From the NCBI RefSeq assembly GCF_032062105.1, contig NW_026936106.1, positions 1 through 64,000 of the forward strand: a stretch of 64,000 nucleotides of DNA, in the 5' to 3' direction. The position numbers and the translations under genes were made by a program. Under the pieces are notes generated by a model. It did no database searches. It was not told where the DNA came from and worked only from the letters and a program-made list of their open reading frames with translations. Position 1 is the first letter of the stretch. Each line of letters starts with the position of its first letter. Below are positions 30,993-64,000 of this stretch, one piece after another. This stretch comes from Saccostrea cucullata (taxonomy: Eukaryota).

Positions 30993-31519
30993 TGTGGCGA
31001 CTGTCTATCAGTTTCTTGAATGATCACACAGGTTTTTCCTTTTTCCATTTTATATACATATGCAAACATATAAACAGTACAAAAACAAACATACATTAGA
31101 CTGAAAGTAAGAAACATGCCACATTGGAAATAGTTACAACATACATATTATCTCAAAATCCTAGAAATATGTGTCTACTACTGCACAAGCTCTTCTATTA
31201 AGTCTACCTTTTACCTTAATTCTACAAGTGACTGAAATCTATATCAAAAACTTTAATTAAACGATCTGACTATCTCTGACTTCTGACGAACGTCTGCTAC
31301 ACTTCTGCTCTACTTATTTCCTGTTTCTAAAACTAGACAAAAGATAAACAAACGGACAAAAACGGAAACGGACTAAAAAATACACCATAAACTCTGACCT
31401 GACAAAAACGGACACATAAATAATTACACTTATGACATACAATAACAATGTCAGAAAATCATAATAAAATAGAAATGAATAGGAAATTAAACATTGTTAA
31501 TGTTAACACATTCACAACA
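30993..31519 (-). repeat. 3'-terminal LTR (527 bp)
   Basis: tgtggcgac...cacaaca on the + strand; about 6 differences from the LTR at 42005. Confidence 0.93.
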
Positions 31520-31539
31520 CTCCCGCGACCAAAAATGAA

Positions 31540-34500: not shown

Positions 34501-35057
34501 CCAGAAGAATCTAGTAGCATCACGGTCTTCCTCCTGTAAGCCAATTTGCAAGAACGCTTTCTCAATGTCTGCGGTTATTCCTATCTTCTTAAGTCTAAAG
34601 CGCATCAGAAGTCCACATAAATCATGCAGCATCACAGGTCCCCTGTGCAAACACTCATTCAAGCTGGTTTTCTTATGTCCTGACTTAGCCGATGCATCAT
34701 ACACAATCCTTACCTTTGTAGTAGGTTTGGTCAAATCTATCACTGCGTGATGAGGTATATAATGCTTAATACCTGTCTCTCTTTGTTGGGATGGAATTTT
34801 CTCTATAATTCCCTTTTTACACTGGTCCTGAATAATGTCATCATACTTGTGCAGTAAATCAGGGTTACACTGTAACTTGTGAAGTAGTGACTTTAGCCTT
34901 CCATATGCTAGTTCCCGATTTTCTGGTAACTCAGGATATTCTTCTTTCCACGGCCAGGTGACTTGGTATCTTTTGTTTTCCATTTTTAGTGTGCTGTTGA
35001 AATTTTTCAGCGCTTTCTCATCATCTGAAGTGTGGGGAGAATCTTGAATCCCAATAG
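31540..35057 (-). pseudogene. BEL/Pao pol (RT-RNaseH-integrase), 5'-truncated but open
   Basis: YVDN, FCDAS, VDYFGP, SDNA and GGFYERL motifs; homology to the full-length copy stops at 35057. Confidence 0.9.
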
Positions 35058-35119
35058 AATCCAAAGCTCTCCAAACCTGTGTGATCAATGTGGCGACTGT
35101 CTATCAGTTTCTTGAATGA

Positions 35120-35485
35120 TCACACAGGTTTTTTCAGAATTGATAGGTTTTCTTGTAGTGCTTTCTCTAGAATAATCAGCTGATCTGTGTGTTCACTTGC
35201 TTTGGTCAATAAAAGAAACACCTTTTCACTGTCTTCACTAAATTTCTCTTCTTCGCCTTGTTTAAGCTCTTTGTCTTCTATTGCCAATGACCACTTCTCC
35301 ATTGTCTCTTCAAGTTTGGCACTGAATTCCTTTATACGTCTAATTGATGTTTCAACATTTTTTAGGAGAGCCGATGGATCCTCCTCTGAAATGTCGGCCG
35401 TCACAAATTCTTCACTCCTTTTCATCTCTTTATCTATAAGATTCCTGTACCTGGTACAGAGTCCCTTGAGATAGGTCACAGACAT
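35120..35485 (-). pseudogene. BEL/Pao gag N-terminal fragment
   Basis: Matches the first ~120 aa of the 1872-aa ORF, then runs into an LTR U5 piece and stops. Confidence 0.9.
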
Positions 35486-35747
35486 TTTCTTTTAGTTGAG
35501 TCAACACAATACGAAAGCTTTTTGGTTCCCACAACGGCTTCCCGGGTTCCGGCACCAATCAGTTGCAGTCCGCCTTATCTCTTATTTCAAAATTTGCAAA
35601 TGAATTTTTACTGGAAGCATTATGGACATTTTCTGACTGCAGTGCTTTGGATTTCCAAGATTGTTGTGAATGTGTTAACATTAACAATGTTTAATTTATT
35701 TTCTATATTATTTTAATTTATTTATATAAAGTGTAAGATTCAATCAA

Positions 35748-36288
35748 TGTGGCGACTGTCTATCAGTTTCTTGAATGATCACACAGGTTTTTCCTTTTTC
35801 CATTTTATATGCATATGCAAACATATAAACAGTACAAAACAAATATACATTAGACTGAAAGTAAGAAACATGCCACATTGGAAATAGTTACAACATGCAT
35901 ATTATCTCAAAATCCTAGAAATATGTGTCTACTACTGCACAAGCTCTTCTATTAAGTCTACCTTTTACCTTAATTCTACAAGTGACTGAAATCTATATCA
36001 AAAAACTTTAATTAAACGATCTGACTATCTCTGACTTCTGACGAACGTCTGCTACACTTCTGCTCTACTTATTTCCTGTTTCTAAAACTAGACAAAAGAT
36101 AAACAAACGGACAAAAACGGAAAAGGACTAAAAAATACACTATATACTTTAACCTGATAAAAACGGACACATAAACAATTACATTTAGGATATAAAATAC
36201 AATAACAACAATCTTACACTTTATATCAATAAATCAAAATAATATAGAAAATAAATTAAACATTGTTAATGGTGACACATTCACAACA
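35748..36288 (-). repeat. Internal LTR (541 bp, variant U3)
   Basis: TG...CA; U3 half differs from the LTRs at 30993 and 42005. Confidence 0.92.
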
Positions 36289-36308
36289 CTCCCACGACCA
36301 AAATTGAA

Positions 36309-39300
36309 TCAAGGGTTTAACCAGTTCTTGATCTTGTCTACTGCTCTACAGGCGGCTTGTCTCTTAGGTCTCTCTTGTGGTGAGTCTCTAACATCCGCTT
36401 CTGTTTTTGAATTGGTCACCATGGGATTTTCGGATGAGACACTTTTATCACTTTCGGTACTTTGATCCTTCCTGTCATTGGACTCTGTTTCCTTTGAACA
36501 CTCGATCGGATATAAAAGATTTAGTGGCCTATTAAGGGTCTTCTTATTTGGAAGTAAAACCTTTCCGGAACGGATCTGTCCATCTCGACTAACAGTCAGT
36601 TCACACAAACGTCCTACTTTCCAGGTTCCACGCGGAAGTTCATCTTTAACCAACACCACATCTCCCATCCTTGGCTCCATACTGTGCTGAATTCTTCCTT
36701 CCTTCAGTCTGTATGCTGTTCTTTCTCGCAAACTCAGGAGATAGTCATCTCGCCAAGATTTCCAAAAGGCATCAAGATGTTTTTGTCCCTTCTTCCATGT
36801 CTGTAATAACTTCTCAGCACTGCTGATGTTAGGTATATACTCTGTGTCCTCGGTATCTTCTTCTTCACTATCAGGAATACCAATTTTAGGATTCAGTGTC
36901 AGGAAGTGAGCTGGTGTGAGAATTATGTTAGAATTTATGTCATCTCCCACATAAACTAATGGCCTTGAATTAACAACTGCCTCTGTCTCTGCTAATAGAG
37001 TTCTTAGTTGTTCACTTGTAAGACACAGCTTCCCAATAGCTTTCCGTAGGCATCTCTTCACTACTCCAATGAGACGCTCGTAGAAGCCTCCCATCCATGG
37101 GGCCAGTTCGACTATGAACTGCCATTTGATATCTTCATTTGCGATATAGCTCTGCACATCTGGATCCCTGACTGTTGAGGTCCAAATTTTCTCTAGCGCA
37201 CTACTTGCCAACTTAAACTGGGAAGCATTGTCAGAGATAAGTTCTTTCGGTTTTCCCCATCGAGCAATGAATCGTCTCAAGCCAAGAAGGAACTCTTCGG
37301 TCGACATATCTTGCATAAGCTCGAGATGGATACCTCTGGTGACTAAACATGTGAATAGGCACACCCACACTTTCTTGGTCCCAGTGTCTGTTTTCACATA
37401 AATAGGGCCGAAGTAGTCGACACCAGTGTAAGTAAATGGCGAAGCCTCATTCACTCTCTTCTTTGGTAAGGGTGGCATTACAGGCATTCTGTATGGTCCA
37501 CCTTCATGTCGCTTGCATATACTACAATTCTGCAGTACTCTTCTCACTTGAGAACGTCCTTGAGGAATCCAATATGTCTGTCGGATTAAGGATAGTGTTT
37601 GAGATATTCCAACATGAAGTGATTTCCTGTGGTAACTGTCTATGAGTAGATCTGTCACATGATTTTTCTTTGGCAGTAAAATTGGTGTTCTAGCTCCTTC
37701 AGTCAAGTGGGCAGCTCCAAGTCGACCAACGCATCTTATAATTTTGTCTTCATCCAAAATGAGTCCTAATTGGTTAACTAAGTTAAGCCTCTTTCCTTCT
37801 GTTAAAGCACTCTTTACCTCTTTATAGTTCTCATTTTGGATACTCCTTATCCAGAGTAACTTTGCCCCACTCAGTTCTGTTGCAGTTAATGTATCAGAAA
37901 ATGACTTTTCCTTCTTAATTTTGCTGATGAATCTTAGTATCCATGCCGATACTCTGACTAACTTAACGAAGGACGAAAATTGCTTGTCGTCTATGCTAAA
38001 TGGGTTCTTGCATTCAGCAGGAGTGTCCGAGCATCCGTGACGACCCTCCCCCACTAACAGTTTGGTTTCATACACTCTAGATTTCTTGTACTCTGAAGCA
38101 ATAGCTTCACTGTGATTTTCACTCGGAGTTGGATTCCATATCGGCCACTGACTTTTGCTTTCTTTCAGCCATGCTGGGCCATTCCACCACTGTCTGTTTT
38201 CTTTCAATATTTCCACTGTACTACCTCTGGTAGCAATATCTGCTGGATTATCAGTAGAAGCCACATATTGAAATTCAAGGTCACTGCTCTTCTGAATTTC
38301 CTTCACTCTGTTCTCCACAAAAACTGTCAAGGGCTTCTTAGTCTTTATCCAATGTAAAACACACTGCGAGTCTGTCCAGAGTATTTTCGCACACACTGTT
38401 AGTTTTAGTTGACTCTGAACGAAGTTTAGGCTCCTTACTCCAATGAGAAGTGCTAGAAGTTCAAGACGAGGCATGGTAATTGTCTTTGTCGGTGCTAGAC
38501 GAGTCTTGGAAAATAACAAGTTGCTGATGCTTGAATTGGTAGTTGTCATCTGAAGGTAAATGGCAGTGGCAAATGCCTTTGCAGATGCGTCACAAAAACA
38601 CAAAAGTCTGTAAGACACCTCTCCTGACAGTCCTATATATCTTGGAATCTGACCCTTTGGAATCCCTCCTAAATCTGCTCTTATCTCTCTCCACTGCTGT
38701 ATATATTCTTCTGTGAGTGCTTCATCCCACTCAAAATTTTTCTTCCACAGAGTCTGAAGAAAAAGTTTTGCCTTTAATGTCACAGGTGTGAAAAATCCAA
38801 GAGGGTCGAATATTGATGCAACTACTTGGAGTACTTCTCGTTTGGTAACTGGTTCTGTCTTACTCATACAATTTCCACATGGCACTGAAAGTACATCCTC
38901 CATAAGATTCCAAGTCAATCCAAGTATTTTTAACTTTTCTCTAGCTGATTGATCTTCATCAGGTATGGTCTCATAAAAGTCCTTGGCATTAGATGCCCAA
39001 TCTCTCAAGTTCATGGATATACTACTGAATATCTCCTTGGCCTCCCTGTATAGAATTTCTGCTTCTTGAATGTTATCAACTCCTGTAATAACATTATCTA
39101 CATAAATATTGTTTCGGATGTTTTCAGCTGTCTTGCTTTCATATGTACTAAGGTGATGGTCAATAGTTGCCGCAAGTAAGAATGGACTTGAGATCACACC
39201 AAAAGGCACTCTGCAAAATCTGTACACTTGTACATTGCTGTCTACTGTAGCCTTGTTAGCATCCTTCAACCAGAAGAATCTAGTAGCATCACGGTCTTCC

Positions 39301-41927
39301 TCCTGTAAGCCAATTTGTAAGAACGCTTTCTCAATGTCTGCTGTTATTCCTATCTTCTTAAGTCTAAAGCGCATCAGAAGTCCACATAAATCATGCAGCA
39401 TCACAGGTCCCCTGTGCAAACACTCATTCAAGCTGGTTTTCTTATGTCCTGACTTAGCCGATGCATCATACACAATCCTTACCTTTGTAGTAGGTTTGGT
39501 CAAATCTATCACTGCATGATGAGGTATATAATGCTTAATACCTGTCTCTCTTTGTTGGGATGGAATTTTCTCTATAATTCCCTTTTTACACTGGTCCTGA
39601 ATAATGTCATCATACTTGTGCAGTAAATCAGGGTTACACTGTAACTTGTGAAGTAGGGACTTTAGCCTTCCATACGCTAGTTCCCGATTTTCTGGTAGCT
39701 CAGGAAATTCTTCTTTCCATGGCCAGGTGACTTGATATCTTTTGTTTTCCATTTTCAGTGTGCTGTTGAAATTTTTCAGCGCTTTCTCATCATCTGAAGT
39801 GTGGGGAGAATCTTGAATCCCAATAGTCTCCAGCTTCCAGAATTCATCAATAGAAGGTTTAAATGGCAAGTACTCATCCACGGCAGAATGAAGGCAACAC
39901 TCTGTCAAAGATAAAGTTCCATTGGTTATCATCATCACTTGCTCCTCCTCTTTACTGTAAGCTTCTTGGGTCCTTCCAGTGAGAATCCACCCAAGTCTGG
40001 AAGCTAGTAAATAAAATCCCTTTTGAATTTCAATTCTTTCTGGCAAAATCAAATCCAGGTAATAATCATTACCTATCAGAATGTCAATTGTTGAGTTTTC
40101 AAAATTCACTGGTAGAGTGTCTGCTAACTGAAGATTTTTCCACAGACTTTGGCATTTCAATTGTACGTCCTTGGGGATAGGCTTCCTTTGTACTGTTCCT
40201 GTAATGCTGGGTACAACATTTGCTTCAATACTAAGATAAAGTCTATCTTTGAGTTTCATTTTCAGGGAAACTTTGGGTGTCTTCACAATCTTTGGCTTCT
40301 CTGCACCAAAAGTTATGAGGGAAATCTTCTCTGTCGTAAGAATCTTCAACTTTAATTTCTCAGCCAAGTTTTCTGTTATGTAGGTTCTCTGGGATCCTGA
40401 GTCCATGAGAAGTCTTGCTGGTTCTGAATTTTCTCCATTGTGGTTTGTCACCTCTGTTTGAGCCGTCTGCATCAAAACAATATCCCCTGATGATAATAAA
40501 CTATTCTCAGAACTCTGAGAAAAGTTTGAAGTCTCTTGTTTGCTACACACTTCCTCGGTCAAATGTGAACTTTCTCTCTGACGTACAGAAAACTTCTTAG
40601 GACACAAACTTCTGTGGTGGTCACGAGTCTGTCTACAGTGATAACATGCCTTATCCACTCTGCATTCCTTACTTCTATGTCCAGGCTTTAAGCAAATAAA
40701 ACACTTCCCTCTGAGTCTCTGTTTTCTATCCTCTATAGTTCTGTACTTTCTGCACTCATCTGTCCAATGTCTGCCCTCACAGAATGTACACACTGGAGGC
40801 TTCCCTGAAATTCCAGGCGGTCTGCTTTGTCTAAATGATGAGTCCTTAGTGGATATCACAAGGGCTTCTGCTGTAGTATGCTTTTCCTCATGTACAGGGA
40901 CACTAGAGGCTTGAATTTCTGACGATTCCTTGACTTTTATGTAGTTTTTCATCAACTCTCTCAATTTCTGAACTGTCCATTTTTCCTTTGGCCCTTTCTG
41001 TATTTCAAGCTGAAGCAGAGTTTCTTTAGGTAGCTTTGATGTTATCATTGAGACAAACACATCTTGGTTCACATCCTGATGTAACGCTTCTAGGCTCCTC
41101 AGATGTCTCTCGAGGTCATCATTTAACTTCCGCAGGCTTGACGTGTCATTTGTAGCTGACTGTGTATTAATGAGTTCTACATAATGTTTGTTGATAACTG
41201 ATTGGATGTCTCCAAACCTCTCTCTTAGAGTGGCAACAGCTACGTCATAGTTTTCATTTGAAAGTGAAAGTCCAGAAATAGCTTCTTGAGCTGCTCCTTT
41301 CAATTTGCTCTTTAGGTAATTAAATTTCTCTATGTTGGAGAGCTTTGGATTCTTATGAACAGTGGCCTCAAAGGCATCCCAGAATTCCTTGAACTTGATT
41401 TTGTCTCCACTGTAAGTAGGAAGTTCTAACTTGGGTAGTTTAACAGCTACCGGACCCGTCTTTGGAGTGTGTTGTTGAATCGACAACTCTTGAAAATGAA
41501 GTATCTGTTCCTGCATTCTCGCCTGTAAATGAATCATCTGTTCTAGTCTTGGGTCTGTCATTTCAGCAGGTTTTTTCAGAATTGATAGGTTTTCTTGTAG
41601 TGCTTTCTCTAGAATAATCAGCTGATCTGTGTGTTCACTTGCTTTGGTCAATAAAAGAAACACCTTTTCACTGTCTTCACTAAATTTCTCTTCTTCGCCT
41701 TGTTTAAGCTCTTTGTCTTCTATTGCCAATGACCACTTCTCCATTGTCTCTTCAAGTTTGGCACTGAATTCCTTTATACGTCTAATTGATGTTTCAACAT
41801 TTTTTAGGAGAGCCGATGGATCCTCCTCTGAAATGTCGGCCGTCACAAATTCTTCACTCCTTTTCATCTCTTTATCTATAAGATTCCTGTACCTGGTACA
41901 GAGTCCCTTGAGATAGGTCACAGACAT
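36309..41927 (-). CDS. Intact BEL/Pao gag-pol polyprotein (1872 aa)
   Basis: Gag KLPKLELPTYSGD, three Cys/His knuckles, protease LMDSGSQ, RT YVDN, RNase H, HHCC/DDE integrase and C-terminal domain in a single ORF. Confidence 0.95.
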   Translation of the reverse strand: MSVTYLKGLCTRYRNLIDKEMKRSEEFVTADISEEDPSALLKNVETSIRRIKEFSAKLEETMEKWSLAIEDKELKQGEEEKFSEDSEKVFLLLTKASEHTDQLIILEKALQENLSILKKPAEMTDPRLEQMIHLQARMQEQILHFQELSIQQHTPKTGPVAVKLPKLELPTYSGDKIKFKEFWDAFEATVHKNPKLSNIEKFNYLKSKLKGAAQEAISGLSLSNENYDVAVATLRERFGDIQSVINKHYVELINTQSATNDTSSLRKLNDDLERHLRSLEALHQDVNQDVFVSMITSKLPKETLLQLEIQKGPKEKWTVQKLRELMKNYIKVKESSEIQASSVPVHEEKHTTAEALVISTKDSSFRQSRPPGISGKPPVCTFCEGRHWTDECRKYRTIEDRKQRLRGKCFICLKPGHRSKECRVDKACYHCRQTRDHHRSLCPKKFSVRQRESSHLTEEVCSKQETSNFSQSSENSLLSSGDIVLMQTAQTEVTNHNGENSEPARLLMDSGSQRTYITENLAEKLKLKILTTEKISLITFGAEKPKIVKTPKVSLKMKLKDRLYLSIEANVVPSITGTVQRKPIPKDVQLKCQSLWKNLQLADTLPVNFENSTIDILIGNDYYLDLILPERIEIQKGFYLLASRLGWILTGRTQEAYSKEEEQVMMITNGTLSLTECCLHSAVDEYLPFKPSIDEFWKLETIGIQDSPHTSDDEKALKNFNSTLKMENKRYQVTWPWKEEFPELPENRELAYGRLKSLLHKLQCNPDLLHKYDDIIQDQCKKGIIEKIPSQQRETGIKHYIPHHAVIDLTKPTTKVRIVYDASAKSGHKKTSLNECLHRGPVMLHDLCGLLMRFRLKKIGITADIEKAFLQIGLQEEDRDATRFFWLKDANKATVDSNVQVYRFCRVPFGVISSPFLLAATIDHHLSTYESKTAENIRNNIYVDNVITGVDNIQEAEILYREAKEIFSSISMNLRDWASNAKDFYETIPDEDQSAREKLKILGLTWNLMEDVLSVPCGNCMSKTEPVTKREVLQVVASIFDPLGFFTPVTLKAKLFLQTLWKKNFEWDEALTEEYIQQWREIRADLGGIPKGQIPRYIGLSGEVSYRLLCFCDASAKAFATAIYLQMTTTNSSISNLLFSKTRLAPTKTITMPRLELLALLIGVRSLNFVQSQLKLTVCAKILWTDSQCVLHWIKTKKPLTVFVENRVKEIQKSSDLEFQYVASTDNPADIATRGSTVEILKENRQWWNGPAWLKESKSQWPIWNPTPSENHSEAIASEYKKSRVYETKLLVGEGRHGCSDTPAECKNPFSIDDKQFSSFVKLVRVSAWILRFISKIKKEKSFSDTLTATELSGAKLLWIRSIQNENYKEVKSALTEGKRLNLVNQLGLILDEDKIIRCVGRLGAAHLTEGARTPILLPKKNHVTDLLIDSYHRKSLHVGISQTLSLIRQTYWIPQGRSQVRRVLQNCSICKRHEGGPYRMPVMPPLPKKRVNEASPFTYTGVDYFGPIYVKTDTGTKKVWVCLFTCLVTRGIHLELMQDMSTEEFLLGLRRFIARWGKPKELISDNASQFKLASSALEKIWTSTVRDPDVQSYIANEDIKWQFIVELAPWMGGFYERLIGVVKRCLRKAIGKLCLTSEQLRTLLAETEAVVNSRPLVYVGDDINSNIILTPAHFLTLNPKIGIPDSEEEDTEDTEYIPNISSAEKLLQTWKKGQKHLDAFWKSWRDDYLLSLRERTAYRLKEGRIQHSMEPRMGDVVLVKDELPRGTWKVGRLCELTVSRDGQIRSGKVLLPNKKTLNRPLNLLYPIECSKETESNDRKDQSTESDKSVSSENPMVTNSKTEADVRDSPQERPKRQAACRAVDKIKNWLNP

Positions 41928-41981
41928 TTTCTTTTAGTTGAGTCAACACAATACGAAAGCTTTTTGGTTCCCACAACGGCT

Positions 41982-41999
41982 TCCCGGGTTCCGGCACCA
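41982..41999 (-). promoter_or_regulatory. Primer-binding site TGGTGCCGGAACCCGGGA (tRNA-Phe-like); further copies at 35540-35557 and 44226-44243
   Basis: 5 nt downstream of the LTR end; one mismatch (G:U compatible) to the complement of the tRNA-Phe 3' end TGGTGCCGAAACCCGGGA. Confidence 0.75.
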
Positions 42000-42004
42000 A
42001 TCAA

Positions 42005-42531
42005 TGTGGCGACTGTCTATCAGTTTCTTGAATGATCACACAGGTTTTTCCTTTTTCCATTTTATATACATATGCAAACATATAAACAGTACAAAAACAA
42101 ACATACATTAGACTGAAAGTAAGAAACATGCCACATTGGAAATAGTTACAACATACATATTATCTCAAAATCCTAGAAATATGTGTCTACTACTGCACAA
42201 GCTCTTCTATTAAGTCTACCTTTTAGCTTAATTCTACAAGTGACTGAAATATATATCAAAAACTTTAATTAAACGATCTGACTATCTCTGACTTCTGACA
42301 AAAGTCTGCTACACTACTGCTCTACTTATTTCCTGTTTCTAAAACTAGACAAAAGATAAACAAACGGATAAAAACGGAAACGGACTAAAAAATACACCAT
42401 AAACTCTGACCTGACAAAAACGGACACATAAATAATTACACTTATGACATACAATAACAATGTCAGAAAATCATAATAAAATAGAAATGAATAGGAAATT
42501 AAACATTGTTAATGTTAACACATTCACAACA
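42005..42531 (-). repeat. Internal LTR (527 bp)
   Basis: Near-identical to 30993-31519; shared between two units. Confidence 0.93.
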
Positions 42532-42551
42532 CTCCCGCGACCAAAAATGAA

Positions 42552-44161
42552 TCATGGTTTTAACCAATCTTTGATCTTCTCTACTGCTCTACAGGCGGCT
42601 CGTCTCTTAGGTCTCTCTTGTGGTGAGTCTCTAGCATCCGCTTCTGTTTTTGAATTGGTCACCGTGGGATTTTCGGATGAGACACTTTTATCACTTTCGG
42701 TACTTTGATCCTTCCTGTCATTGGACTCTGTTTCCTTTGAACACTCGATCGGATATAAAAGATTTAGTGGCCTATTAAGGGTCTTCTTATTTGGAAGTAA
42801 AACCTTTCCGGAACGGATCTGTCCATCTCTGCTAACGGTCAGTTCACACACACGTCCTACTTTCCAGGTTCCACGCGGAAGTTCATCTTTAACCAACACC
42901 ACATCTCCAATCCTTGGCTCCATACTGTGCTGAATTCTTCCTTCCTTCAGTCTGTATGCTGTTCTTTCTCGCAAACTCAGGAGATAGTCATCTCGCCAGG
43001 ATTTCCAAAAGGCATCAAGATGTTTTTGTCCCTTCTTCCATGTCTGTAATAACTTCTCAGCACTGCTGATGTTAGGTAGATACTCTGTGTCCTCTGTATC
43101 TTCTTCTTCACTATCAGGAATACCAATTTTAGGATTCAGTGTCAGGAAGTGAGCTGGTGTGAGAATTATGTTAGAATTTATGTCATCTCCCACATAAACT
43201 AATGGCCTTGAATTAACAACTGCCTCAGTCTCTGCTAATAGAGTTCTTAGTTGTTCACTTGTAAGACACAGTTTCCCAATAGTTTTTCGTAGGCATCTCT
43301 TCACTACTCCAATGAGACGCTCGTAGAAGCCTCCCATCCATGGGGCCAGTTCGACTATGAACTGCCATTTGATATCTTCATTTGCGATATAGCTCTGCAC
43401 ATCTGGATCCCTGACTGTTGAGGTCCAAATTTTCTCAAGCGCACTACTTGCCAACTTAAACTGGGAAGCATTGTCAGAGATAAGTTCTTTCGGTTTTCCC
43501 CATCGAGCAATGAATCGTCTCAAGCCAAGAAGGAACTCTTCAGTCGACATATCTTGCATAAGCTCGAGATGGATACCTTTGGATTTTTATGAACAGTGGC
43601 CTCAAAGGCATCCCAGAATTCCTTGAACTTGATTTTGTCTCCACTGTAAGTAGGAAGTTCTAACTTGGGTAGTTTAACAGCTACCGGGCCCGTCATTGGA
43701 GTGTGTTGTTGAATCGACAACTCTTGAAAATGAAGTATCTGTTCCTGCATTCTCGTCTGTAAATGAATCATCTGTTCTAGTCTTGGGTCTGTCATTTCAG
43801 TAGGTTTTTTCAGCATTGATAGGTTTTCTTGTAGTGCTTTCTCTAGAATAATCAGCTGATCTGTGTGTTCACTCGCTTCGGTCAATAGAAGAAACACCTT
43901 TTCACTGTCTTCACTAAATTTCTCTTCTTCACCTTGTTTGGGCTCTTTGTCTTCTATCGCCAATGACCACTTCTCCATTGTCTCTTCAAGTTTAGCACTG
44001 AATTCCTTTATACGTCTAATTGATGTTTCCACATTTTTTAGGAGAGCCGATGGATCCTCCTCTGAAATGTCTGCCGTCACAAATTCTTCACTCTTTTTCA
44101 TCTCTTTATCTATAAGATTCCTGTACCTGGTACAGAGTCCCTTGAGATACGTTACTGACAT
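42552..44161 (-). pseudogene. Internally deleted BEL/Pao unit: gag 5' part fused out of frame to the integrase 3' part (junction ~43577)
   Basis: ORFs 43520-44161 and 42552-43559; junction ggatac-ct-ttggat. Confidence 0.9.
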
Positions 44162-44248
44162 TTTCTTTTACTTACTTTTAGTTTGGTTAACACAATACGA
44201 AAGCTTTTTCGTTCCCTCAACGGTCTCCCGGGTTCCGGCACCAATCAA

Positions 44249-44574
44249 TGTGGCGACTGACTACTGATCCTGAATATAACACTGTTTTCTAGTTTCACAT
44301 TTATTTAATAAACATGATAAACAAGCACATAAACATTCAACGATCTACCTTTCTATCTTCTGCTCTACTTATTTCCTGTTTCTAAAACTAGACAAAAGAT
44401 AAACAAACGGACAAAAACGGAAACGGACTAAAAAATACACCATAAACTCTGACCTGACAAAAACGGACACATAAATAATTACACTTATGACATACAATAA
44501 CAATGTCAGAAAATCATAATAAAATAGAAATGAATAGGAAATTAAACATTGTTAATGTTAACACATTCACAACA
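44249..44574 (-). repeat. 5'-terminal LTR (326 bp, chimeric, different U5)
   Basis: 44357-44574 matches the 30993 LTR; ~44260-44356 does not. Confidence 0.88.
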
Positions 44575-53128: not shown

Positions 53129-56100
53129 GGGTACATCCCACTAATTATTTTTAGAATCGGTAGGAGAAGAAAGTAGTGCAGAAAAAATTACAAGTTCCTT
53201 AATTTGCAGACTTGCATAAAAAAAATTGGGCAGATGTACTGAACTGAGCCTCACACTTGTTAATTAGCAGTATCTTTCCTACCAAAAAAGCTTGGCAAAT
53301 GTAATTTATCAAGAAGATCAGCCGAATTATTTTGTGTATTATAACGCCAGTGAGAACTCTGAAATTTCCCTACTTTCACTTTCATTTTTAGAGGTTCCCG
53401 CAGACAGACGCATTTTGCCGGAAAACGAATCTGACATGCCACCTCGAGATTTTAACCAAGGAAAGACAAGTTGATGTGCTTTGATTTGAGGGGTCACTCA
53501 CTTCTGAACGAAAATTAGGGACATCGCTATGAGAAGAAACGTTAACATTGTCGCCTATGGGAAAACAATTAGTGGACTGTACCCATATTGGGAAGCCTAT
53601 AAGTAAGTGATAGATGTCATAGACCTTGAATTTATTTCAAAGTTGGTGTTTTCTATTATTTTCAATTGTTAAAATTTATGAAAAAAACAATTCTTTTATT
53701 GTTGATTTACATTTTTAAACAAATTGATTCATAAATAAAGTGTCTAGCCCCCCCCCCCCCCCCCCCTCCCGGAACAGTCAACATGCTCATACGTGTATCA
53801 CCCATCGTTTACACATGTATCGTGTAGATTAAATGTATCGATTTATATCATTTATTTATTCAGAATCATAAATATATAATTTGATGAAGAAACAATTATG
53901 TAGAAGTACATGATCCACTGTGGTTTATTTTCAATACACAAAAATTCACAAATGAGGTCGGGATCGGTATTCAATCAGGGTCAAGGTCGAAGTGAAAGTA
54001 GACTTAGCAGAAAGTTATCAAAACTGGTCAGTGCAGTGTTTAGCAGTTTATGGGTGATGGGCATTTGTATTTTACACAGGCGGTAAGAGGTATACCTTAG
54101 TACAGTATTTGTAAATAGCAATTTAATGTTTTTGGAACATGATGATTGACAGGTCACATACAGGACATACATCATTTCAGATCAGTTGCGCGCTGTCAAG
54201 CTGGGTACAGTGTCTGGGAGTTAAACGATGTGTGTGGACATGTACATTAACTAATTTTTCTCATATTTTTTAGCAATTGCATTACATGTATTTGTTGAAT
54301 GTACAATTATTGTCAGTAAAACATGCTTTTTACCTATTCTGCTGAATTAACTTAATTACCAATGTTAACAGTGTGATTTCAAGTGGAAGCAAATTCATCA
54401 TTTTTAATTAATTTCAAATTAGGGGCATAAAAGGAATATGGTAAAATTGTATGTGTTGAATGTCTGTGTGTCTGTATGTCTGTCTGCAAATGTGATATTG
54501 TGCCATTTATTGTATTGATTTTTTTTTTAGGTTCATGGTGATTGGTACAGGAAAACTATGAGGTTCATGCAGATGGTGTTTAAAACTATTGGCCAGCAAA
54601 TGCAAATACATCTTGAAACATCATCAGCAAAATGTGACAGTCGGCAAAATGTGTAAGTTAAAATTTCTTTTAAAAAAATTTCATTGAAGTGGAGGTGGGG
54701 TGGGGAGTGGGGGTGGGGGTGGGGGTGGGGGGTGTACATATTGAATAGGTGATAAGAATATGGAAGTATTTATCTATAACTAATCTGTACATGCACTGCT
54801 ATATACATTTTGCAGCTCATATAGATTTTCTTTTCTTATTTAAGAATTTCAAATTAATTAGATCTACATCTTTGTTTGTAAATTATGTATTATTAAGATT
54901 ACACGGATATAAGAATTGACATTTCATAAATGTTTGACTGTCAAAATTATGCCCTTTGTCAAAAATTCAAAATTTTGTCTCATTTTCCTACAAATTACAA
55001 AATGGTTACCATGGAAACAAAACAGCTTTACTAGATTATTTATTAAATCTGCAAAACCACATATTTTTATTTTTTAAAGTTATAATGAATATATTATCAC
55101 TGATTTTGTCTTAAATGAAAAGTACGGGAAAAGTGATGATACACATGTATTGAGCTATCCATTATTATGATGTCATTGTGACGTCATAGATGACTAAATT
55201 TGCATTGGCATAAAAATTGCTTTGAAACAAATGATTCTATATAGGAGTATAAAGGCTTATAACTTTTTTATTCATAGACCAAATTTCATGAATGATATGT
55301 CAATGGACAGGAAATAATCAGTACTTTCTTATTTTACTACATTCGGGGTATTTGTTAACTTAATTTTTTGGTCATTTCTGGAGAAACTATGACTTATAGG
55401 GTGAAAAATGGTCATATTTTGTGCGGAAATACATAAATTTTTTAAAATAAGTGAAATTGACCCAATTAAATGCTTGATTATGATTTGACTATATGTACTT
55501 AAAGTTATGAAGCAGAATAAGAATGGTATAAATGTGTTAATAAGCTAAAATTTGACTTAAAACTTGGGAGCAGTTTTGGCTAGATTGGAGCATTTTTTAA
55601 GGATATTACACATGGAATTGTAAATGCTGTAAAATCTGAATTAATGGTTGAATTTTCATGAAACTTGGCATGATGTCTCTACTTATGCTCTAGATTGACA
55701 AACAGTGTGAAATATTGTAAAATCAAAAAAATGCTTTCTCATATTGGGTACATCCCACTAATTATTTTTAGAATCGGTAGGAGAAGAAAGTAGTGCAGAA
55801 AAAATTACAAGTTCCTTAATTTGCAGACTTGCATAAAAAAAATTGGGCAGATGTACTGAACTGAGCCTCACACTTGTTAATTAGCAGTATCTTTCCTACC
55901 AAAAAAGCTTGGCAAATGTAATTTATCAAGAAGATCAGCCGAATTATTTTGTGTATTATAACGCCAGTGAGAACTCTGAAATTTCCCTACTTTCACTTTC
56001 ATTTTTAGAGGTTCCCGCAGACAGACGCATTTTGCCGGAAAACGAATCTGACATGCCACCTCGAGATTTTAACCAAGGAAAGACAAGTTGATGTGCTTTG

Positions 56101-59100: not shown

Positions 59101-61426
59101 ATAATTTGATGAAGAAACAATTATGTAGAAGTACATGATCCACTGTGGTTTATTTTCAATACACAAAAATTCACAAATGAGGTCGGGATCGGTATTCAAT
59201 CAGGGTCAAGGTCGAAGTGAAAGTAGACTTAGCAGAAAGTTATCAAAACTGGTCAGTGCAGTGTTTAGCAGTTTATAGGTGATGGGCATTTGTATTTTAC
59301 ACAGGCGGTAAGAGGTATACCTTAGTACAGTATTTGTAAATAGCAATTTAATGTTTTTGGAACATGATGATTGACAGGTCACATACAGGACATACATCAT
59401 TTCAGATCAGTTGCGCGCTGTCAAGCTGGGTACAGTGTCTGGGAGTTAAACGATGTGTGTGGACATGTACATTAACTAATTTTTCTCATATTTTTTAGCA
59501 ATTGCATTACATGTATTTGTTGAATGTACAATTATTGTCAGTAAAACATGCTTTTTACCTATTCTGCTGAATTAACTTAATTACCAATGTTAACAGTGTG
59601 ATTTCAAGTGGAAGCAAATTCATCATTTTTAATTAATTTCAAATTAGGGGCATAAAAGGAATATGGTAAAATTGTATGTGTTGAATGTCTGTGTGTCTGT
59701 ATGTCTGTCTGCAAATGTGATATTGTGCCATTTATTGTATTGATTTTTTTTTTAGGTTCATGGTGATTGGTACAGGAAAACTATGAGGTTCATGCAGATG
59801 GTGTTTAAAACTATTGGCCAGCAAATGCAAATACATCTTGAAACATCATCAGCAAAATGTGACAGTCGGCAAAATGTGTAAGTTAAAATTTCTTTTAAAA
59901 AAATTTCATTGAAGTGGAGGTGGGGTGGGGAGTGGGGGTGGGGGTGGGGGTGGGGGGTGTACATATTGAATAGGTGATAAGAATATGGAAGTATTTATCT
60001 ATAACTAATCTGTACATGCACTGCTATATACATTTTGCAGCTCATATAGATTTTCTTTTCTTATTTAAGAATTTCAAATTAATTAGATCTACATCTTTGT
60101 TTGTAAATTATGTATTATTAAGATTACACGGATATAAGAATTGACATTTCATAAATGTTTGACTGTCAAAATTATGCCCTTTGTCAAAAATTCAAAATTT
60201 TGTCTCATTTTCCTACAAATTACAAAATGGTTACCATGGAAACAAAACAGCTTTACTAGATTATTTATTAAATCTGCAAAACCACATATTTTTATTTTTT
60301 AAAGTTATAATGAATATATTATCACTGATTTTGTCTTAAATGAAAAGTACGGGAAAAGTGATGATACACATGTATTGAGCTATCCATTATTATGATGTCA
60401 TTGTGACGTCATAGATGACTAAATTTGCATTGGCATAAAAATTGCTTTGAAACAAATGATTCTATATAGGAGTATAAAGGCTTATAACTTTTTTATTCAT
60501 AGACCAAATTTCATGAATGATATGTCAATGGACAGGAAATAATCAGTACTTTCTTATTTTACTACATTCGGGGTATTTGTTAACTTAATTTTTTGGTCAT
60601 TTCTGGAGAAACTATGACTTATAGGGTGAAAAATGGTCATATTTTGTGCGGAAATACATAAATTTTTTAAAATAAGTGAAATTGACCCAATTAAATGCTT
60701 GATTATGATTTGACTATATGTATTTAAAGTTATGAAGCAGAATAAGAATGGTATAAATGTGTTAATAAGCTAAAATTTGACTTAAAACTTGGGAGCAGTT
60801 TTGGCTAGATTGGAGCATTTTTTAAGGATATTACACATGGAATTGTAAATGCTGTAAAATCTGAATTAATGGTTGAATTTTCATGAAACTTGGCATGATG
60901 TCTCTACTTATGCTCTAGATTGACAAACAGTGTGAAATATTGTAAAATCAAAAAAATGCTTTCTCATATTGGGTACATCCCACTAATTATTTTTAGAATC
61001 GGTAGGAGAAGAAAGTAGTGCAGAAAAAATTACAAGTTCCTTAATTTGCAGACTTGCATAAAAAAAATTGGGCAGATGTACTGAACTGAGCCTCACACTT
61101 GTTAATTAGCAGTATCTTTCCTACCAAAAAAGCTTGGCAAATGTAATTTATCAAGAAGATCAGCCGAATTATTTTGTGTATTATAACGCCAGTGAGAACT
61201 CTGAAATTTCCCTACTTTCACTTTCATTTTTAGAGGTTCCCGCAGACAGACGCATTTTGCCGGAAAACGAATCTGACATGCCACCTCGAGATTTTAACCA
61301 AGGAAAGACAAGTTGATGTGCTTTGATTTGAGGGGTCACTCACTTCTGAACGAAAATTAGGGACATCGCTATGAGAAGAAACGTTAACATTGTCGCCTAT
61401 GGGAAAACAATTAGTGGACTGTACCC
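53129..61426. repeat. Tandem array, period ~2.61 kb: four 456-bp MITEs (53129-53584, 55746-56201, 58358-58813, 60971-61426) alternating with three ~2.16-kb spacers; outer TSD ATCT
   Basis: MITE TIRs gggtacatcccactaatt / aattagtggactgtaccc; units differ only by a few SNPs and homopolymer lengths. Confidence 0.93.
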
Positions 61427-64000
61427 ATCTCGACGCAAAATGTAATAACGCAAAATGTAATGATCAGAAAATTGTGTTATTACATTTTGCGTTATTACAT
61501 TTTGCGTTGATCTCGACGCAAAATGTAATAACGCAAAATGTAATAGTCCTCAAAAGTGTGCTGTTACATTTTGCGTTATTACATTCTGCGTTGATTTCAA
61601 CGCAAAATGTTATAACACAAAATGTAACAATCCAGGTTTATTACATTTCGCGTTGATATTACATTTCGCGTTGTAACAATGCTTACTCCTCTAGGTACCC
61701 GTTCCAATCTCTGGATCTCTGGTATTCCCGGGGGGGGGGGGGGGGCCGTATTTATGCCCTGCCCACATGTTTGTATTGTTTGTATATTTTTCGACATAAA
61801 TCAATACTCATTATCCTCACTTTTTTTTCATTTCAGAAATATTCAACTTTTAGATAGAATGGGTTCAGACGCCATTAAAAAACACAATGCATTTACTTTT
61901 CCGTAATTTAAACACAATACCTCGGATTGAAACCTGGTCCGTTCATATTTAAAAATAAATCTTTATAGCTAGAATCATTTAATATAAACGTACCCATTTT
62001 CGACTAAATAAGTCTAAAAACAATTTTCAATCAATATGCCTTTCAGAACAATATATGAATCTAATATGTTGAAGATGACATTACCGACAACATAATTTTA
62101 GAAAAATCAAACTTTTCCGGGTGATTGTCCTCGCCTTGTACACTTTTTTCTCTCTTTTATAAATCTATGATAAAGAGATTATAATGCAACTTGTGTAATA
62201 TTTCACTTATTTTCACACTATCATTAGACATCAGAACTTAATTAAAACTAAGAATCTGAAACAGAATCTATGAAGATAAAAGTTTAATTAAAATTTGGCA
62301 TTAAATCCCCATAGACAGATCCAGAAAAGCGGATAAAGGTTAGGGGATCAAGACCTGATAATTTTTTCAATTTCACTAAAACTTAAGAATATTAAAGTAA
62401 TCATATCAAAATAACCCCCCCCCTCCCTCCTTCCCAAGAAACGCAAACTCTTAACAGTCAGTCTACGATAAAAGAATATAGTTCCAGAAGTTCACTGATT
62501 TTCAGGGATATGTTATGATTTCTATGAAAAAAGATCCATGCATTTCTTTGAGAAATGTGGTAACCATTTGTTTTCTTTTTATTACATGAATTTCTTTTAA
62601 ATATTTCATGCAATCTCTTCTTAACGCTTATTTGAGTAAATGAACGAAGCGGCATTACGATTTGAAGTTGAATGCGTTTTAATTAATCATTAAATTATCA
62701 AATCAAAACTTAGAATGCATATATATGCCACTAAATATTTACAAAACCCTGTGTATATGTAAAGTCTAAGAGTTGAAATCGATCTTTAAAATTTTACAAT
62801 ATTACATGTAAATTGGTGAGCAACATGAAAATTCTTAATTCGGTATGTTTTTGTTGATGAATGACTGTCATAAGTTGATAGGAAAAATGAGAATATATAT
62901 GGAAGAATGTAGCTTGTCCACCAATTAAGCCGACCCCATCCCCAACCATAAAATAGGATTTTTGTATTGGGATCTTTTAGTGTTATGGACAACAATGTAA
63001 CCCCCTCCCGTTTCCCGAAGAAATTTATGCTTGAGCAATCCTTTATTCCGGAATGAAAAAATGGAACTTAACATATAAAATAACAAAATAAAAACGTCAT
63101 TACAGTTGCTTCCATTAGAAATTAAAAAAGATACTGTCACGAAAGGTTCAAAATGTTATAGATAGGGGTATAATTTATTTTATTAAAAGAAAAATAAGTA
63201 ACGTCAGGTGCCTGTGTGTTTGTACTCTCCTAAGTAACTTACCAAGAGGCCACACTACTTTTTCTATAATTTATATACTTAAATACATATGTATCACGCT
63301 CACCGATTGAGCATAAAATGCTTAAGGTGAGCATATGACACATGGACCTCCTACGGACTGGGACATTGTTGAAATGTAAGAGGAGTCTTGGGAAGAAAAT
63401 ATTGTACAGTACTGTTGTAAACACAAAGTAACGTCAATAAATTATTTTACTAATTGCACTAGGCCTAAATGCTATATGTATACTCGAAAAAAGTATAGCT
63501 GTCATGACAACAAAGATAGCTTTCTGGATATTTTCTACGCAAACATAATATAGCTCTGGAAAAGTTGGGTAGGTGCATATTTGATGTAATTGCCAGGTTA
63601 TAAAGAAGACCTTGTGGTCGAATTTGATAGCTTACGTTTGATAAAGATTCATATTAAACATTACAATAAATGTTTTATTGAAATAATGTCAACAGTCCAT
63701 TCCAGAGGATGATTAGTCGAAAAATGACCATTAGATGCGTGAAAAACGCGTGCTACAGATGTTTATGGAGGGGTAGATGAAACAAAAATATGATTATCTT
63801 TAAATATACCAAGAATAAGTCTTATATTGGTTGAAGTAGTTCTATTATTAGTAAGAAAACGTATATAAAGGACATTTTTTGTCTAAATGTGCAGACAGAA
63901 ACTTCGAATGATCCAAACAAATATAGCTAGTGATCCAAATCAAGTAGATTTTCGAATAGCACTTTGTATACAGTGACCTCTAGATGCTTCTACACATGTA

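What the first reader, a model, noticed from the sequence alone, without database searches (positions are those of the whole stretch)
53129..61426. MITE-bounded amplicon whose cargo is circularly permuted: a eukaryotic analogue of IS-flanked translocatable units
Seen: M-S-M-S-M-S-M, with M a 456-bp TIR element and S ~2.16 kb. The outer ends carry ATCT|...|ATCT (53125-53128, 61427-61430), and removal restores the host motif (..aatctcgacgcaaaa). Every inner junction carries a different duplication, ATATT: S starts atattgggaagcc and ends ctttctcatatt. So the end and start of S were once contiguous and M inserted there, meaning S was a circle or a tandem unit. Inference: a MITE-bearing extrachromosomal circle integrated at a resident MITE (or by cointegrate/composite transposition) and was amplified. 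Two TSDs record both steps, and near-identity of units indicates a very recent event. This is a route for MITEs to move unrelated DNA and seed macrosatellites.
Basis: partly seen in the sequence, partly recalled or inferred. Interest (0 to 1): 0.82.

Follow-up and report, generated by a model that had tools for sequence, protein, structure and literature searches.

The report
KolobokP composite transposon, three-unit array
The array is real, but it is a three-unit, gene-less copy of KolobokP, a composite-like DNA transposon family of bivalves described in 2022, so it is a new member of a known kind rather than a new way for small transposons to capture DNA.

Summary
Window 53129-61426 is M-S-M-S-M-S-M, with four identical 456-bp M copies and three S copies of about 2.16 kb. 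ATCT lies on both outer sides and ATATT at every inner junction. A paralogous empty site with a single ATCT exists on another contig.

M-S-M is not a one-off capture. It is a dispersed family in this genome: about 830 M ends, 135 M-to-S junctions, many monomers each with its own 4-bp ANNT duplication, solo Ms, and arrays of 12 or more units.

The architecture matches KolobokP (Kojima & Bao 2022, PMC9587614) feature by feature:
- ~450-bp long terminal direct repeats (LTDRs) with their own 18-bp inverted ends, GG...CC.
- Target duplications of 4-5 bp.
- Solo LTDRs and (LTDR-INT)n-LTDR multimers.
- An internal region (INT) that starts and ends with the same few bases.

Three motifs from the published KolobokP-7_CGi LTDR match reverse-complemented M at the same offsets. 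A relative on another contig has LTDRs 88% identical to M. It carries a DDE transposase and a His-Me nuclease.

S has no coding capacity, so this copy is non-autonomous. RNA reads show it is transcribed and spliced. First-reader notes elsewhere in this scan flagged KolobokP-like elements on other DNA of this genome.

The parts
53125..53128 (.). Left copy of the 4-bp target-site duplication, ATCT
   Evidence: The empty paralogous site on C12358 has one ATCT.
53129..53584 (-). LTDR copy 1 (M), 456 bp, with 18-bp imperfect inverted ends GG...CC. It matches the published KolobokP-7_CGi LTDR on the minus strand.
53585..55745 (-). INT copy 1 (S), 2161 bp. It has no ORF over 68 aa and starts and ends with ATATT.
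55746..56201 (-). LTDR copy 2
   Evidence: 0 differences from copy 1
56202..58357 (-). INT copy 2, 2156 bp
58358..58813 (-). LTDR copy 3
58814..60970 (-). INT copy 3, 2157 bp
60971..61426 (-). LTDR copy 4
61427..61430 (.). Right copy of the target-site duplication, ATCT
53392..53602 (+). Exon A of the spliced non-coding transcript: LTDR positions 264-456 plus the first 18 nt of INT. Acceptor tttttag|AGG, donor TATAA|GTAAGT. Repeated in each unit.
   Evidence: joints, depth 100-370 against 3-8 in introns. (stop codons in all three frames).
54531..54652 (+). Exon B (122 nt) inside INT. It is spliced from exon A (GT..AG intron 53603-54530) and onward to the acceptor of the next LTDR.
   Evidence: skips 928: about 280 reads in X23; goes back 1261: 275 reads in X23. 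(splice sites kept in the family).
51974..53128 (.). Left part of the host repeat that was interrupted by the insertion
61427..61679 (.). Right part of the host repeat

Best explanation
The region is a trimer, (LTDR-INT)3-LTDR, of a non-autonomous KolobokP element. KolobokP is a composite-like DNA transposon of the Kolobok superfamily. M is its long terminal direct repeat (LTDR) and S is its gene-less internal region (INT).

Shown: the element inserted once into another repeat at ATCT, giving a 4-bp duplication.

Inferred: it is moved in trans by the DDE transposase of coding relatives, which recognises the inverted ends of the LTDRs. That transposase can also move or excise a single LTDR. This would explain why INT begins and ends with the same ATATT and why S-S joints with one ATATT exist.

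Inferred: the number of units grew from one to three after or during insertion. The routes published for KolobokP are unequal crossover between LTDRs (possibly provoked by the element's His-Me nuclease) or re-entry of an LTDR+INT circle.

Shown: the LTDR and INT are transcribed on the window's + strand and spliced into a non-coding RNA. This is the strand of the nuclease gene in coding relatives.
For: Architecture:
- The LTDR is 456 bp with 18-bp inverted ends and GG...CC termini.
- Ten elements have perfect 4-bp flanking duplications, all of the form ANNT. Two loci carry a 5-bp variant.
- A solo LTDR has ATCT on both sides (L056).
- Monomers are found at more than 10 loci. Arrays of 12 or more units lie on C10593 and C13756.
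- Six INT-INT joints carry one ATATT.
- Each of these features is listed for KolobokP in PMC9587614.

Homology:
- Three motifs taken from the published KolobokP-7_CGi LTDR (also 456 bp) match reverse-complemented M at 17/17, 24/25 and 19/19. They lie at offsets 65, 149 and 421 in M, in the same order as in the published LTDR and, by my reading of its text, at about the same offsets. Chance expectation is 0.
- L070 (C7558:7880-12260) has two LTDRs 88% identical to M around a 3387-bp INT.
- That INT holds transposase ORFs (PF20700, 73 bits). On the other strand it has a 165-aa His-Me nuclease ORF (PF05551, 35.7 bits, cut-off 27).
- The L070 peptide strings GNDQARL, TGIPPP and WLPRLT occur in the paper's alignments only in KolobokP-7_Cgi_1p.
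- The L070 INT starts ATATT..AGTAAGTG and ends AAAAAATGCTTTTCCAATATT, like S.

Genome context:
- 93 PF05551 hits, many in 3.6-4.05-kb tandem.

Single insertion:
- An empty paralogous site exists.
Against: - No full alignment of M to the published LTDR was made, because a long sequence from a paper could not be fed to a tool. Homology rests on three motifs plus L070.
- L070 is an old, damaged copy. Its transposase is split into at least two ORFs, its two LTDRs are only 92% alike, and one inverted end is mutated. No intact partner with M-identical LTDRs was shown.
- Apart from about 20 bp at each end, S shares no sequence with the coding INT, so the origin of S is open.
- The two LTDRs of a monomer share private variants. 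Plain cut-and-paste of a composite does not predict this. It needs conversion between LTDRs or copying from a single template.
- The copy number of three is not confirmed by spanning reads.
Confidence: 0.9

Rival explanations
1. A non-autonomous LTR retrotransposon (TRIM/LARD type). M would be the LTR and S the internal region. Tandem LTR-I-LTR-I-LTR would arise by unequal recombination or template switching.
For: - Direct terminal repeats with 4-bp duplications, solo repeats and arrays.
- The flanking bases are always T...A, so M can be read as TG...CA.
- The two Ms of one element differ by 0-5 nt, against about 15 between elements. They share up to 9 private variants.
- LTR concatemers occur in the same window (BEL/Pao).
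Against: - No tRNA-type primer binding site. The consensus after M is ATATTAGGAAGCCTATAAGTAAGTG.
- No polypurine tract beside the 3' M.
- The related coding element carries a DDE transposase and a His-Me nuclease, not gag-pol.
- M is homologous to a curated DNA-transposon LTDR.
- S-S joints with one ATATT show that M leaves or enters as a unit.
Confidence: 0.03
2. One reading: a one-off, very recent capture. A circle of unrelated DNA carrying a MITE integrated at a resident MITE and was amplified.
For: - Inner ATATT duplication and outer ATCT duplication.
- Near-identical units.
- A circle of LTDR+INT is one of the published models for KolobokP multimers.
- A 7-bp variant patch is swapped between the left and right LTDR of two haplotig copies of one locus. 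Excision and re-entry of a circle would explain this.
Against: - The M-S association is family-wide and old: 135 junctions, S copies 87-92% identical to the window's, and the same ATATT everywhere.
- The S ends are shared with a transposase-encoding INT.
- No single donor locus exists.
- The insertion is present on three contigs with 1-4% diverged flanks.
Confidence: 0.04
3. An assembly artefact: a single M-S-M monomer, or reads from several loci, collapsed or expanded into a false three-unit array.
For: - No spanning read was available.
- Contigs C7102 and C23509 break inside S.
- The family is highly repeated.
Against: - The three units carry their own substitutions.
- Arrays of the same family occur on many contigs.
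- Multimers are a documented property of KolobokP.
- Both outer junctions and the empty site agree.
Confidence: 0.03

Closest known systems
KolobokP-7_CGi (Crassostrea gigas; Kojima & Bao 2022, Mob DNA 13:24, PMC9587614)
   Same: - LTDR of exactly 456 bp with matching motifs at corresponding offsets.
- 4-bp target duplication.
- LTDR-INT-LTDR form, with multimers.
- The coding relative here (L070) has an INT of 3387 bp against 3421 bp.
- L070 shares transposase peptide strings found only in KolobokP-7_Cgi_1p.
   Different: - A different species: the start of the C. gigas LTDR is absent from this genome at up to 2 mismatches.
- The window copy has a 2.16-kb gene-less INT that shares only its roughly 20-bp ends with the coding INT.
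- The table lists a TIR of 4 bp for KolobokP-7_CGi, against 18 bp (16 matching) here.
Non-autonomous KolobokP families, such as KolobokP-N1_CGi (3053 bp, LTDR 455, TSD 4, TIR 16) and KolobokP-4N1_CorFlu
   Same: - Monomer length 3073 bp, LTDR 456, TSD 4 (sometimes 5), TIR 16-18.
- Many solo LTDRs, multimers and INT-INT joints with one copy of the terminal short repeat.
   Different: The consensus sequences of the C. gigas N families are not in the supplement text held here, so identity with any named family was not tested.
Bacterial composite transposons and IS26 translocatable units
   Same: Direct repeats of a mobile unit bracket an internal segment. A circle of one repeat plus the segment that re-enters at a resident repeat has been proposed. 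The comparison is made by the KolobokP authors themselves.
   Different: - Here the transposase lies in the internal region, not in the repeats.
- The host is eukaryotic.
- No circle has been shown.
- This copy carries no genes.
TRIM/Cassandra-type tandem LTR retrotransposon arrays
   Same: Repeat-internal-repeat-internal-repeat arrays inside one target duplication, and solo repeats.
   Different: No primer binding site or polypurine tract. The partner enzymes are a DDE transposase and a nuclease, not reverse transcriptase.

Membership tests
KolobokP (Kolobok superfamily) | LTDR-INT-LTDR with direct terminal repeats of about 450 or about 660 bp | tested here: met
   M is 456 bp, in direct orientation, and flanks S in the window and at more than 10 monomer loci.
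KolobokP (Kolobok superfamily) | Each LTDR has its own short (11-18 bp) inverted ends, with termini 5'-RR...YY-3' | tested here: met
   18-bp ends matching at 16 of 18, GG...CC.
KolobokP (Kolobok superfamily) | Target-site duplication of 3-5 bp around monomers, solo LTDRs and multimers | tested here: met
   Ten perfect 4-bp pairs, including the window (ATCT) and a solo LTDR. Two loci have 5-bp ATATT/ATATA. An empty site exists.
KolobokP (Kolobok superfamily) | Multimers (LTDR-INT)n-LTDR, and INT-INT joints that keep one copy of the short repeat at the INT tips | tested here: met
   The window trimer, arrays on C10593, C13756 and C121, and 6 S-S joints with a single ATATT.
KolobokP (Kolobok superfamily) | Sequence homology to a curated KolobokP LTDR | tested here: met
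   Three motifs of KolobokP-7_CGi-LTDR match at 17/17, 24/25 and 19/19, in the same order and at about the same offsets by my reading. None is expected by chance. A full-length alignment was not possible.
KolobokP (Kolobok superfamily) | [quoted passage not shown] | tested here: met
   L070: LTDRs 88% identical to M, PF20700 transposase ORFs, and a PF05551 nuclease ORF on the opposite strand.
KolobokP (Kolobok superfamily) | This copy itself encodes the enzymes (autonomous) | tested here: not met
   No ORF over 68 aa in S and no Pfam match. It is therefore a non-autonomous member.
LTR retrotransposon (TRIM/LARD) | Primer binding site complementary to a tRNA 3' end next to the 5' repeat | tested here: not met
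   The consensus ATATTAGGAAGCCTATAAG has no conserved TGG. The only complementarity to M is 9 nt.
LTR retrotransposon (TRIM/LARD) | Polypurine tract abutting the 3' repeat | tested here: not met
   The last purine run of 8 nt or more is 612 nt upstream. The end reads ...AAAATCAAAAAAATGCTTTTTCATATT.
LTR retrotransposon (TRIM/LARD) | Autonomous partner with gag-pol | tested here: not met
   The M-related coding element carries a transposase and a nuclease instead.
Retrozyme / ribozyme-bearing repeat | Hammerhead or other self-cleaving ribozyme in the repeat | tested here: not met
   No Rfam match at E up to 1 over 53000-56300.

The most novel reading that the evidence does not exclude
KolobokP LTDR pairs may be regenerated or homogenised from a single template. 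One route is a one-LTDR circle that leaves and re-enters the genome. Another is nuclease-provoked conversion.

Three results fit this reading. First, the left and right LTDRs of a monomer share private variants. Second, one locus shows a variant patch swapped between left and right LTDR in its two haplotig copies. Third, S-S joints exist with one ATATT.

If true, this family would give sequence evidence for the circular 'translocatable unit' step that the 2022 paper could only propose. It would also show that gene-less multimers are expressed as repeating-exon non-coding RNAs driven from the LTDR.
Probability: 0.2. Interest if true: 0.5.

Novelty: new member of a known kind. Interest (0 to 1): 0.25.

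Why it matters
It shows that the striking 'MITE-bounded, circularly permuted amplicon' is the normal architecture of a published transposon lineage, so it need not be pursued as a new mechanism.

Four modest additions come out of it:
- An apparently undescribed non-autonomous KolobokP family in another oyster genome, with about 830 LTDR ends and arrays of 12 or more units.
- A strict ANNT pattern in its target duplications.
- Evidence that the two LTDRs of a monomer evolve in concert.
- Direct RNA evidence that LTDR and INT are spliced into a non-coding transcript, and that solo LTDRs donate a splice acceptor to other transcripts.

These points bear on the open question of how KolobokP keeps its composite form and builds multimers.

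Tried and rejected
- **LTR retrotransposon reading.** It was my leading idea up. It was rejected for lack of a primer binding site and polypurine tract, and because the partner encodes a transposase.
- **Relation to the BEL/Pao concatemer at 30993-44574.** No blastn or tblastx similarity. That element has different ends (TGT..ACA) and a 5-bp duplication.
- **Ribozyme or retrozyme.** Rfam gave nothing.
- **Coding potential of the spliced RNA.** The exons were examined one by one, by reference. Exon A has stop codons in all three frames and exon B has no Pfam match. The joined exon model was deliberately not built or searched.
- **Protein remnants in S.** None were found.
- **Metagenome scan for the 18-nt M end.** Two bacterial contigs matched by chance, with no M or S similarity.
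- **Exact M ends in the paper's supplementary sequences.** No hit.
- **The C. gigas KolobokP-7 LTDR start in this genome.** Absent.
- **A wide fetch of other arrays.** Array ends on C10593, C13756 and C121 were therefore not examined.
- **Findings search by sequence.** Blank.
Full report
**1. Observation**

The window holds four direct copies of a 456-bp element, M, at 53129, 55746, 58358 and 60971. They are separated by three copies of a roughly 2.16-kb segment, S.
- The Ms are identical. The three M+S units differ by five substitutions and the length of a poly-C run.
- M has 18-bp imperfect inverted ends, GGGTACATCCCACTAATT and AATTAGTGGACTGTACCC.
- The outer flanks are ATCT on both sides. 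Each inner junction reads ...CTCATATT|M|ATATTGGGAAGCC....
- The array interrupts another repeat. A 96%-identical paralogue of that repeat on contig C12358 joins window 51974-53128 directly to 61427-61679 with a single ATCT.

Contigs C7102 and C23509 carry the same S-M-right-flank junction at 99% and 98.5% identity. They begin inside S. No spanning DNA read was available, so the copy number of three rests on the assembly.

**2. It is a family, not an event**

Searching the window's own genome with S and M gave 278 and 1458 first-look candidates.
- In the loci fetched, the commonest form is a monomer M-S-M flanked by non-S DNA (L005, L011, L012, L016/17, L021-23, L026, L027).
- There are also solo Ms (L056) and long arrays: 13 M-to-S junctions on C10593, 12 on C13756 and at least 5 units on C121.
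- Genome-wide, the right end of M occurs 861 times at up to 2 mismatches, against 31 for the control.
- The M-to-S junction occurs 135 times, against 0 for the control.
- Each monomer has its own 4-bp flanking duplication: AGCT, ATGT, AAAT, ATTT, ACCT, ATAT and others. Ten pairs are perfect.
- All 17 right flanks read ANNT. Two loci carry ATATT/ATATA instead.
- The inner ATATT on both sides of M is family-wide, with consensus ...TGCTTTTTCATATT|M|ATATTAGGAAGCC....
- S copies are 87-92% identical to the window's S, apart from a 98-100% subfamily.

The M-S association is therefore old.

**3. First hypothesis: LTR retrotransposon**

Direct terminal repeats, solo repeats, arrays and 4-bp duplications suggested a gene-less LTR element.

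Evidence in favour:
- The two Ms of one monomer differ by 0-5 positions, while Ms of different elements differ by about 15.
- There are no fixed left/right differences.
- Up to nine private variants are shared by both Ms of one element.

Evidence against:
- There is no tRNA-type primer binding site and no polypurine tract next to the repeats.
- S has no ORF over 68 aa and no Pfam match.
- Rfam finds no ribozyme.

**4. Identification**

A literature search found Kojima & Bao 2022 (Mob DNA 13:24, PMC9587614). It defines KolobokP, a Kolobok lineage 'especially rich in bivalves'. Its features are:
- Each LTDR has its own inverted ends of 11-18 bp, with termini 5'-RR...YY-3'.
- Target duplications are 3-5 bp.
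- Solo LTDRs are abundant.
- Multimers (LTDR-INT)n-LTDR lie inside one duplication.
- INT-INT joints occur in which only one copy of the short sequence at both INT tips is kept. The paper's example is TATA in KolobokP-1_MeMe.
- Non-autonomous families are 1.7-3.3 kb long.

Every one of these features is met here: 456 bp, 18 bp, GG...CC, 4 or 5 bp, solos, multimers and a 3073-bp monomer. A pattern search for S-end-ATATT-S-start also found six S-S joints (C13756, four on C22037 of which two lie 2182 bp apart, and C13600).

Table S1 lists KolobokP-7_CGi with an LTDR of exactly 456 bp, and KolobokP-N1_CGi at 3053 bp with a 455-bp LTDR.

**5. Homology**

The supplement prints the KolobokP-7_CGi LTDR. 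Three motifs taken from it (17, 25 and 19 nt) hit the minus strand of each of the four Ms at 17/17, 24/25 and 19/19. They lie at offsets 65, 149 and 421 from the end of M. By my reading of the published sequence they are in the same order and at about the same offsets. Chance expectation is zero.

The genome has 93 matches to the His-Me homing-endonuclease family PF05551. Many are in tandem at 3.6-4.05 kb, for example nine on C11200. One lies on C7558 between two exact M ends 3839 bp apart.

That stretch is L070 (C7558:7880-12260). It has these features:
- Two LTDRs are 88% identical to M.
- They flank a 3387-bp INT.
- The INT has transposase ORFs on one strand. One matches PF20700 at 73 bits.
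- A 165-aa ORF on the other strand matches PF05551 at 35.7 bits, above the cut-off of 27.
- The L070 peptide strings WLPRLT, GNDQARL and TGIPPP occur in the paper's alignments only in KolobokP-7_Cgi_1p.
- Its INT starts ATATT..AGTAAGTG and ends AAAAAATGCTTTTCCAATATT. These are the same tips as S.

Otherwise S and this INT share nothing. L070 is old and damaged: its transposase is split, its two LTDRs are 92% alike, and one end is mutated.

It is not C. gigas, because the start of the C. gigas LTDR is absent.

**6. Mechanism**

Shown:
- There was one insertion at ATCT.
- M and M-S-M are both units bounded by the same ends.
- M can be absent between two S copies, leaving one ATATT.
- Arrays of many sizes exist.

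Inferred from the published family:
- The element is moved in trans by a KolobokP transposase.
- The trimer arose by unequal crossover between LTDRs, by nuclease-provoked repair, or by re-entry of an LTDR+INT circle.

The sequence does not distinguish these routes. Two results bear on the question:
- The left and right LTDRs evolve in concert.
- C19851 and C4942 are haplotig copies of one locus, 99% identical over 5.2 kb. In them, a variant patch at LTDR positions 236-242 sits in the left LTDR of one copy and the right LTDR of the other. Excision and re-entry of a circle would produce this. So would conversion or a polishing error.

**7. Expression**

Raw oligo-dT RNA reads (X23, X24) and RNA contigs (X6) were laid on window 52629-55745.
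- Depth is 100-370 over 53357-53668 and about 65-120 over 54501-54708. It is 3-8 in the rest of S and 25-40 in the 5' part of M.
- A canonical GT..AG intron at 53603-54530 is supported by about 280 reads in X23.
- An equally frequent joint runs from 54652 back to 53392. This is splicing from the S exon into the acceptor at position 264 of the next LTDR.
- The splice sites are kept across the family.
- Exon A (211 nt) has stop codons in every frame, so the RNA is non-coding.
- The exons were examined one by one. The joined model was not built or searched.
- The transcribed strand is that of the nuclease gene in L070. There the same GTAAGTG donor lies 6 nt after the LTDR, and the nuclease ORF starts right behind it. 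I infer that the LTDR supplies the nuclease gene's promoter and first exon, and that the gene-less family keeps this function.
- Other upstream exons are also spliced onto position 53392 (157 reads in X24). Solo LTDRs are therefore exonised in host transcripts.

**8. Verdict**

It is wrong in treating this as a recent one-off capture of unrelated DNA, and in treating it as new.

The region is a non-autonomous KolobokP trimer, a new member of a known kind. First-reader notes of this scan (s1-701097, s1-707336) flagged KolobokP-like composite elements on other DNA of this genome.

Noticed in passing
window 30993-44574: A multi-unit LTR concatemer with repeats TGTGGCGAC...CACAACA and flanks ACAGT on both sides. 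It is unrelated in sequence to M or S. The same window therefore holds two different repeat-internal-repeat multimers.
   Followed up: partly
window 51950-52185 and 61427-61680: The host of the insertion is itself a repeat, with 543-1653 first-look candidates. It is built of 83-84-bp units made of nested palindromes of TTACATTTTGCGTTA / ACGCAAAATGTAATA. The arms at 51960-52078 and 61427-61545 are 94% complementary.
   Followed up: partly
L016 (C19851:10985-16160) and L017 (C4942:176541-181720): These are two haplotig copies of one M-S-M locus, 99% identical over 5.2 kb. A 3-nt variant patch at LTDR positions 236, 238 and 242 sits in the left LTDR of one copy and the right LTDR of the other. 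Possible causes are conversion, circle excision and re-entry, or an assembly polishing error.
   Followed up: partly
window 53391/53392 and 53585-53589 (RNA loose ends): In run X24, 157 reads join a foreign upstream exon (TAACACTTCAGAACCTTGTCAGCGATTCTC) to the LTDR acceptor. Another 103 reads run from the LTDR end into ATATGCACTGAGTGACTGG. A solo LTDR elsewhere is part of an abundant host transcript.
   Followed up: no
own genome: C11200:2998-35358, C586, C10732, C1748, C11969: His-Me nuclease ORFs (PF05551) are repeated at exact periods of 4017, about 3644, about 4045 and about 4030 bp. These are probably multimers of coding KolobokP families, up to nine units on one contig.
   Followed up: no
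window 53748-53774 and 54686-54737 (each unit): S carries a poly-C run of about 22 nt that varies in length between units. It also carries a (GTGGGG)n tract. Reads appear cut at the G-rich tract.
   Followed up: no
C7789:611 and 4449: Two M-to-S-type junctions lie 3838 bp apart with no PF05551 hit. This is a longer S-type unit or a nuclease-less variant with the same INT start.
   Followed up: no
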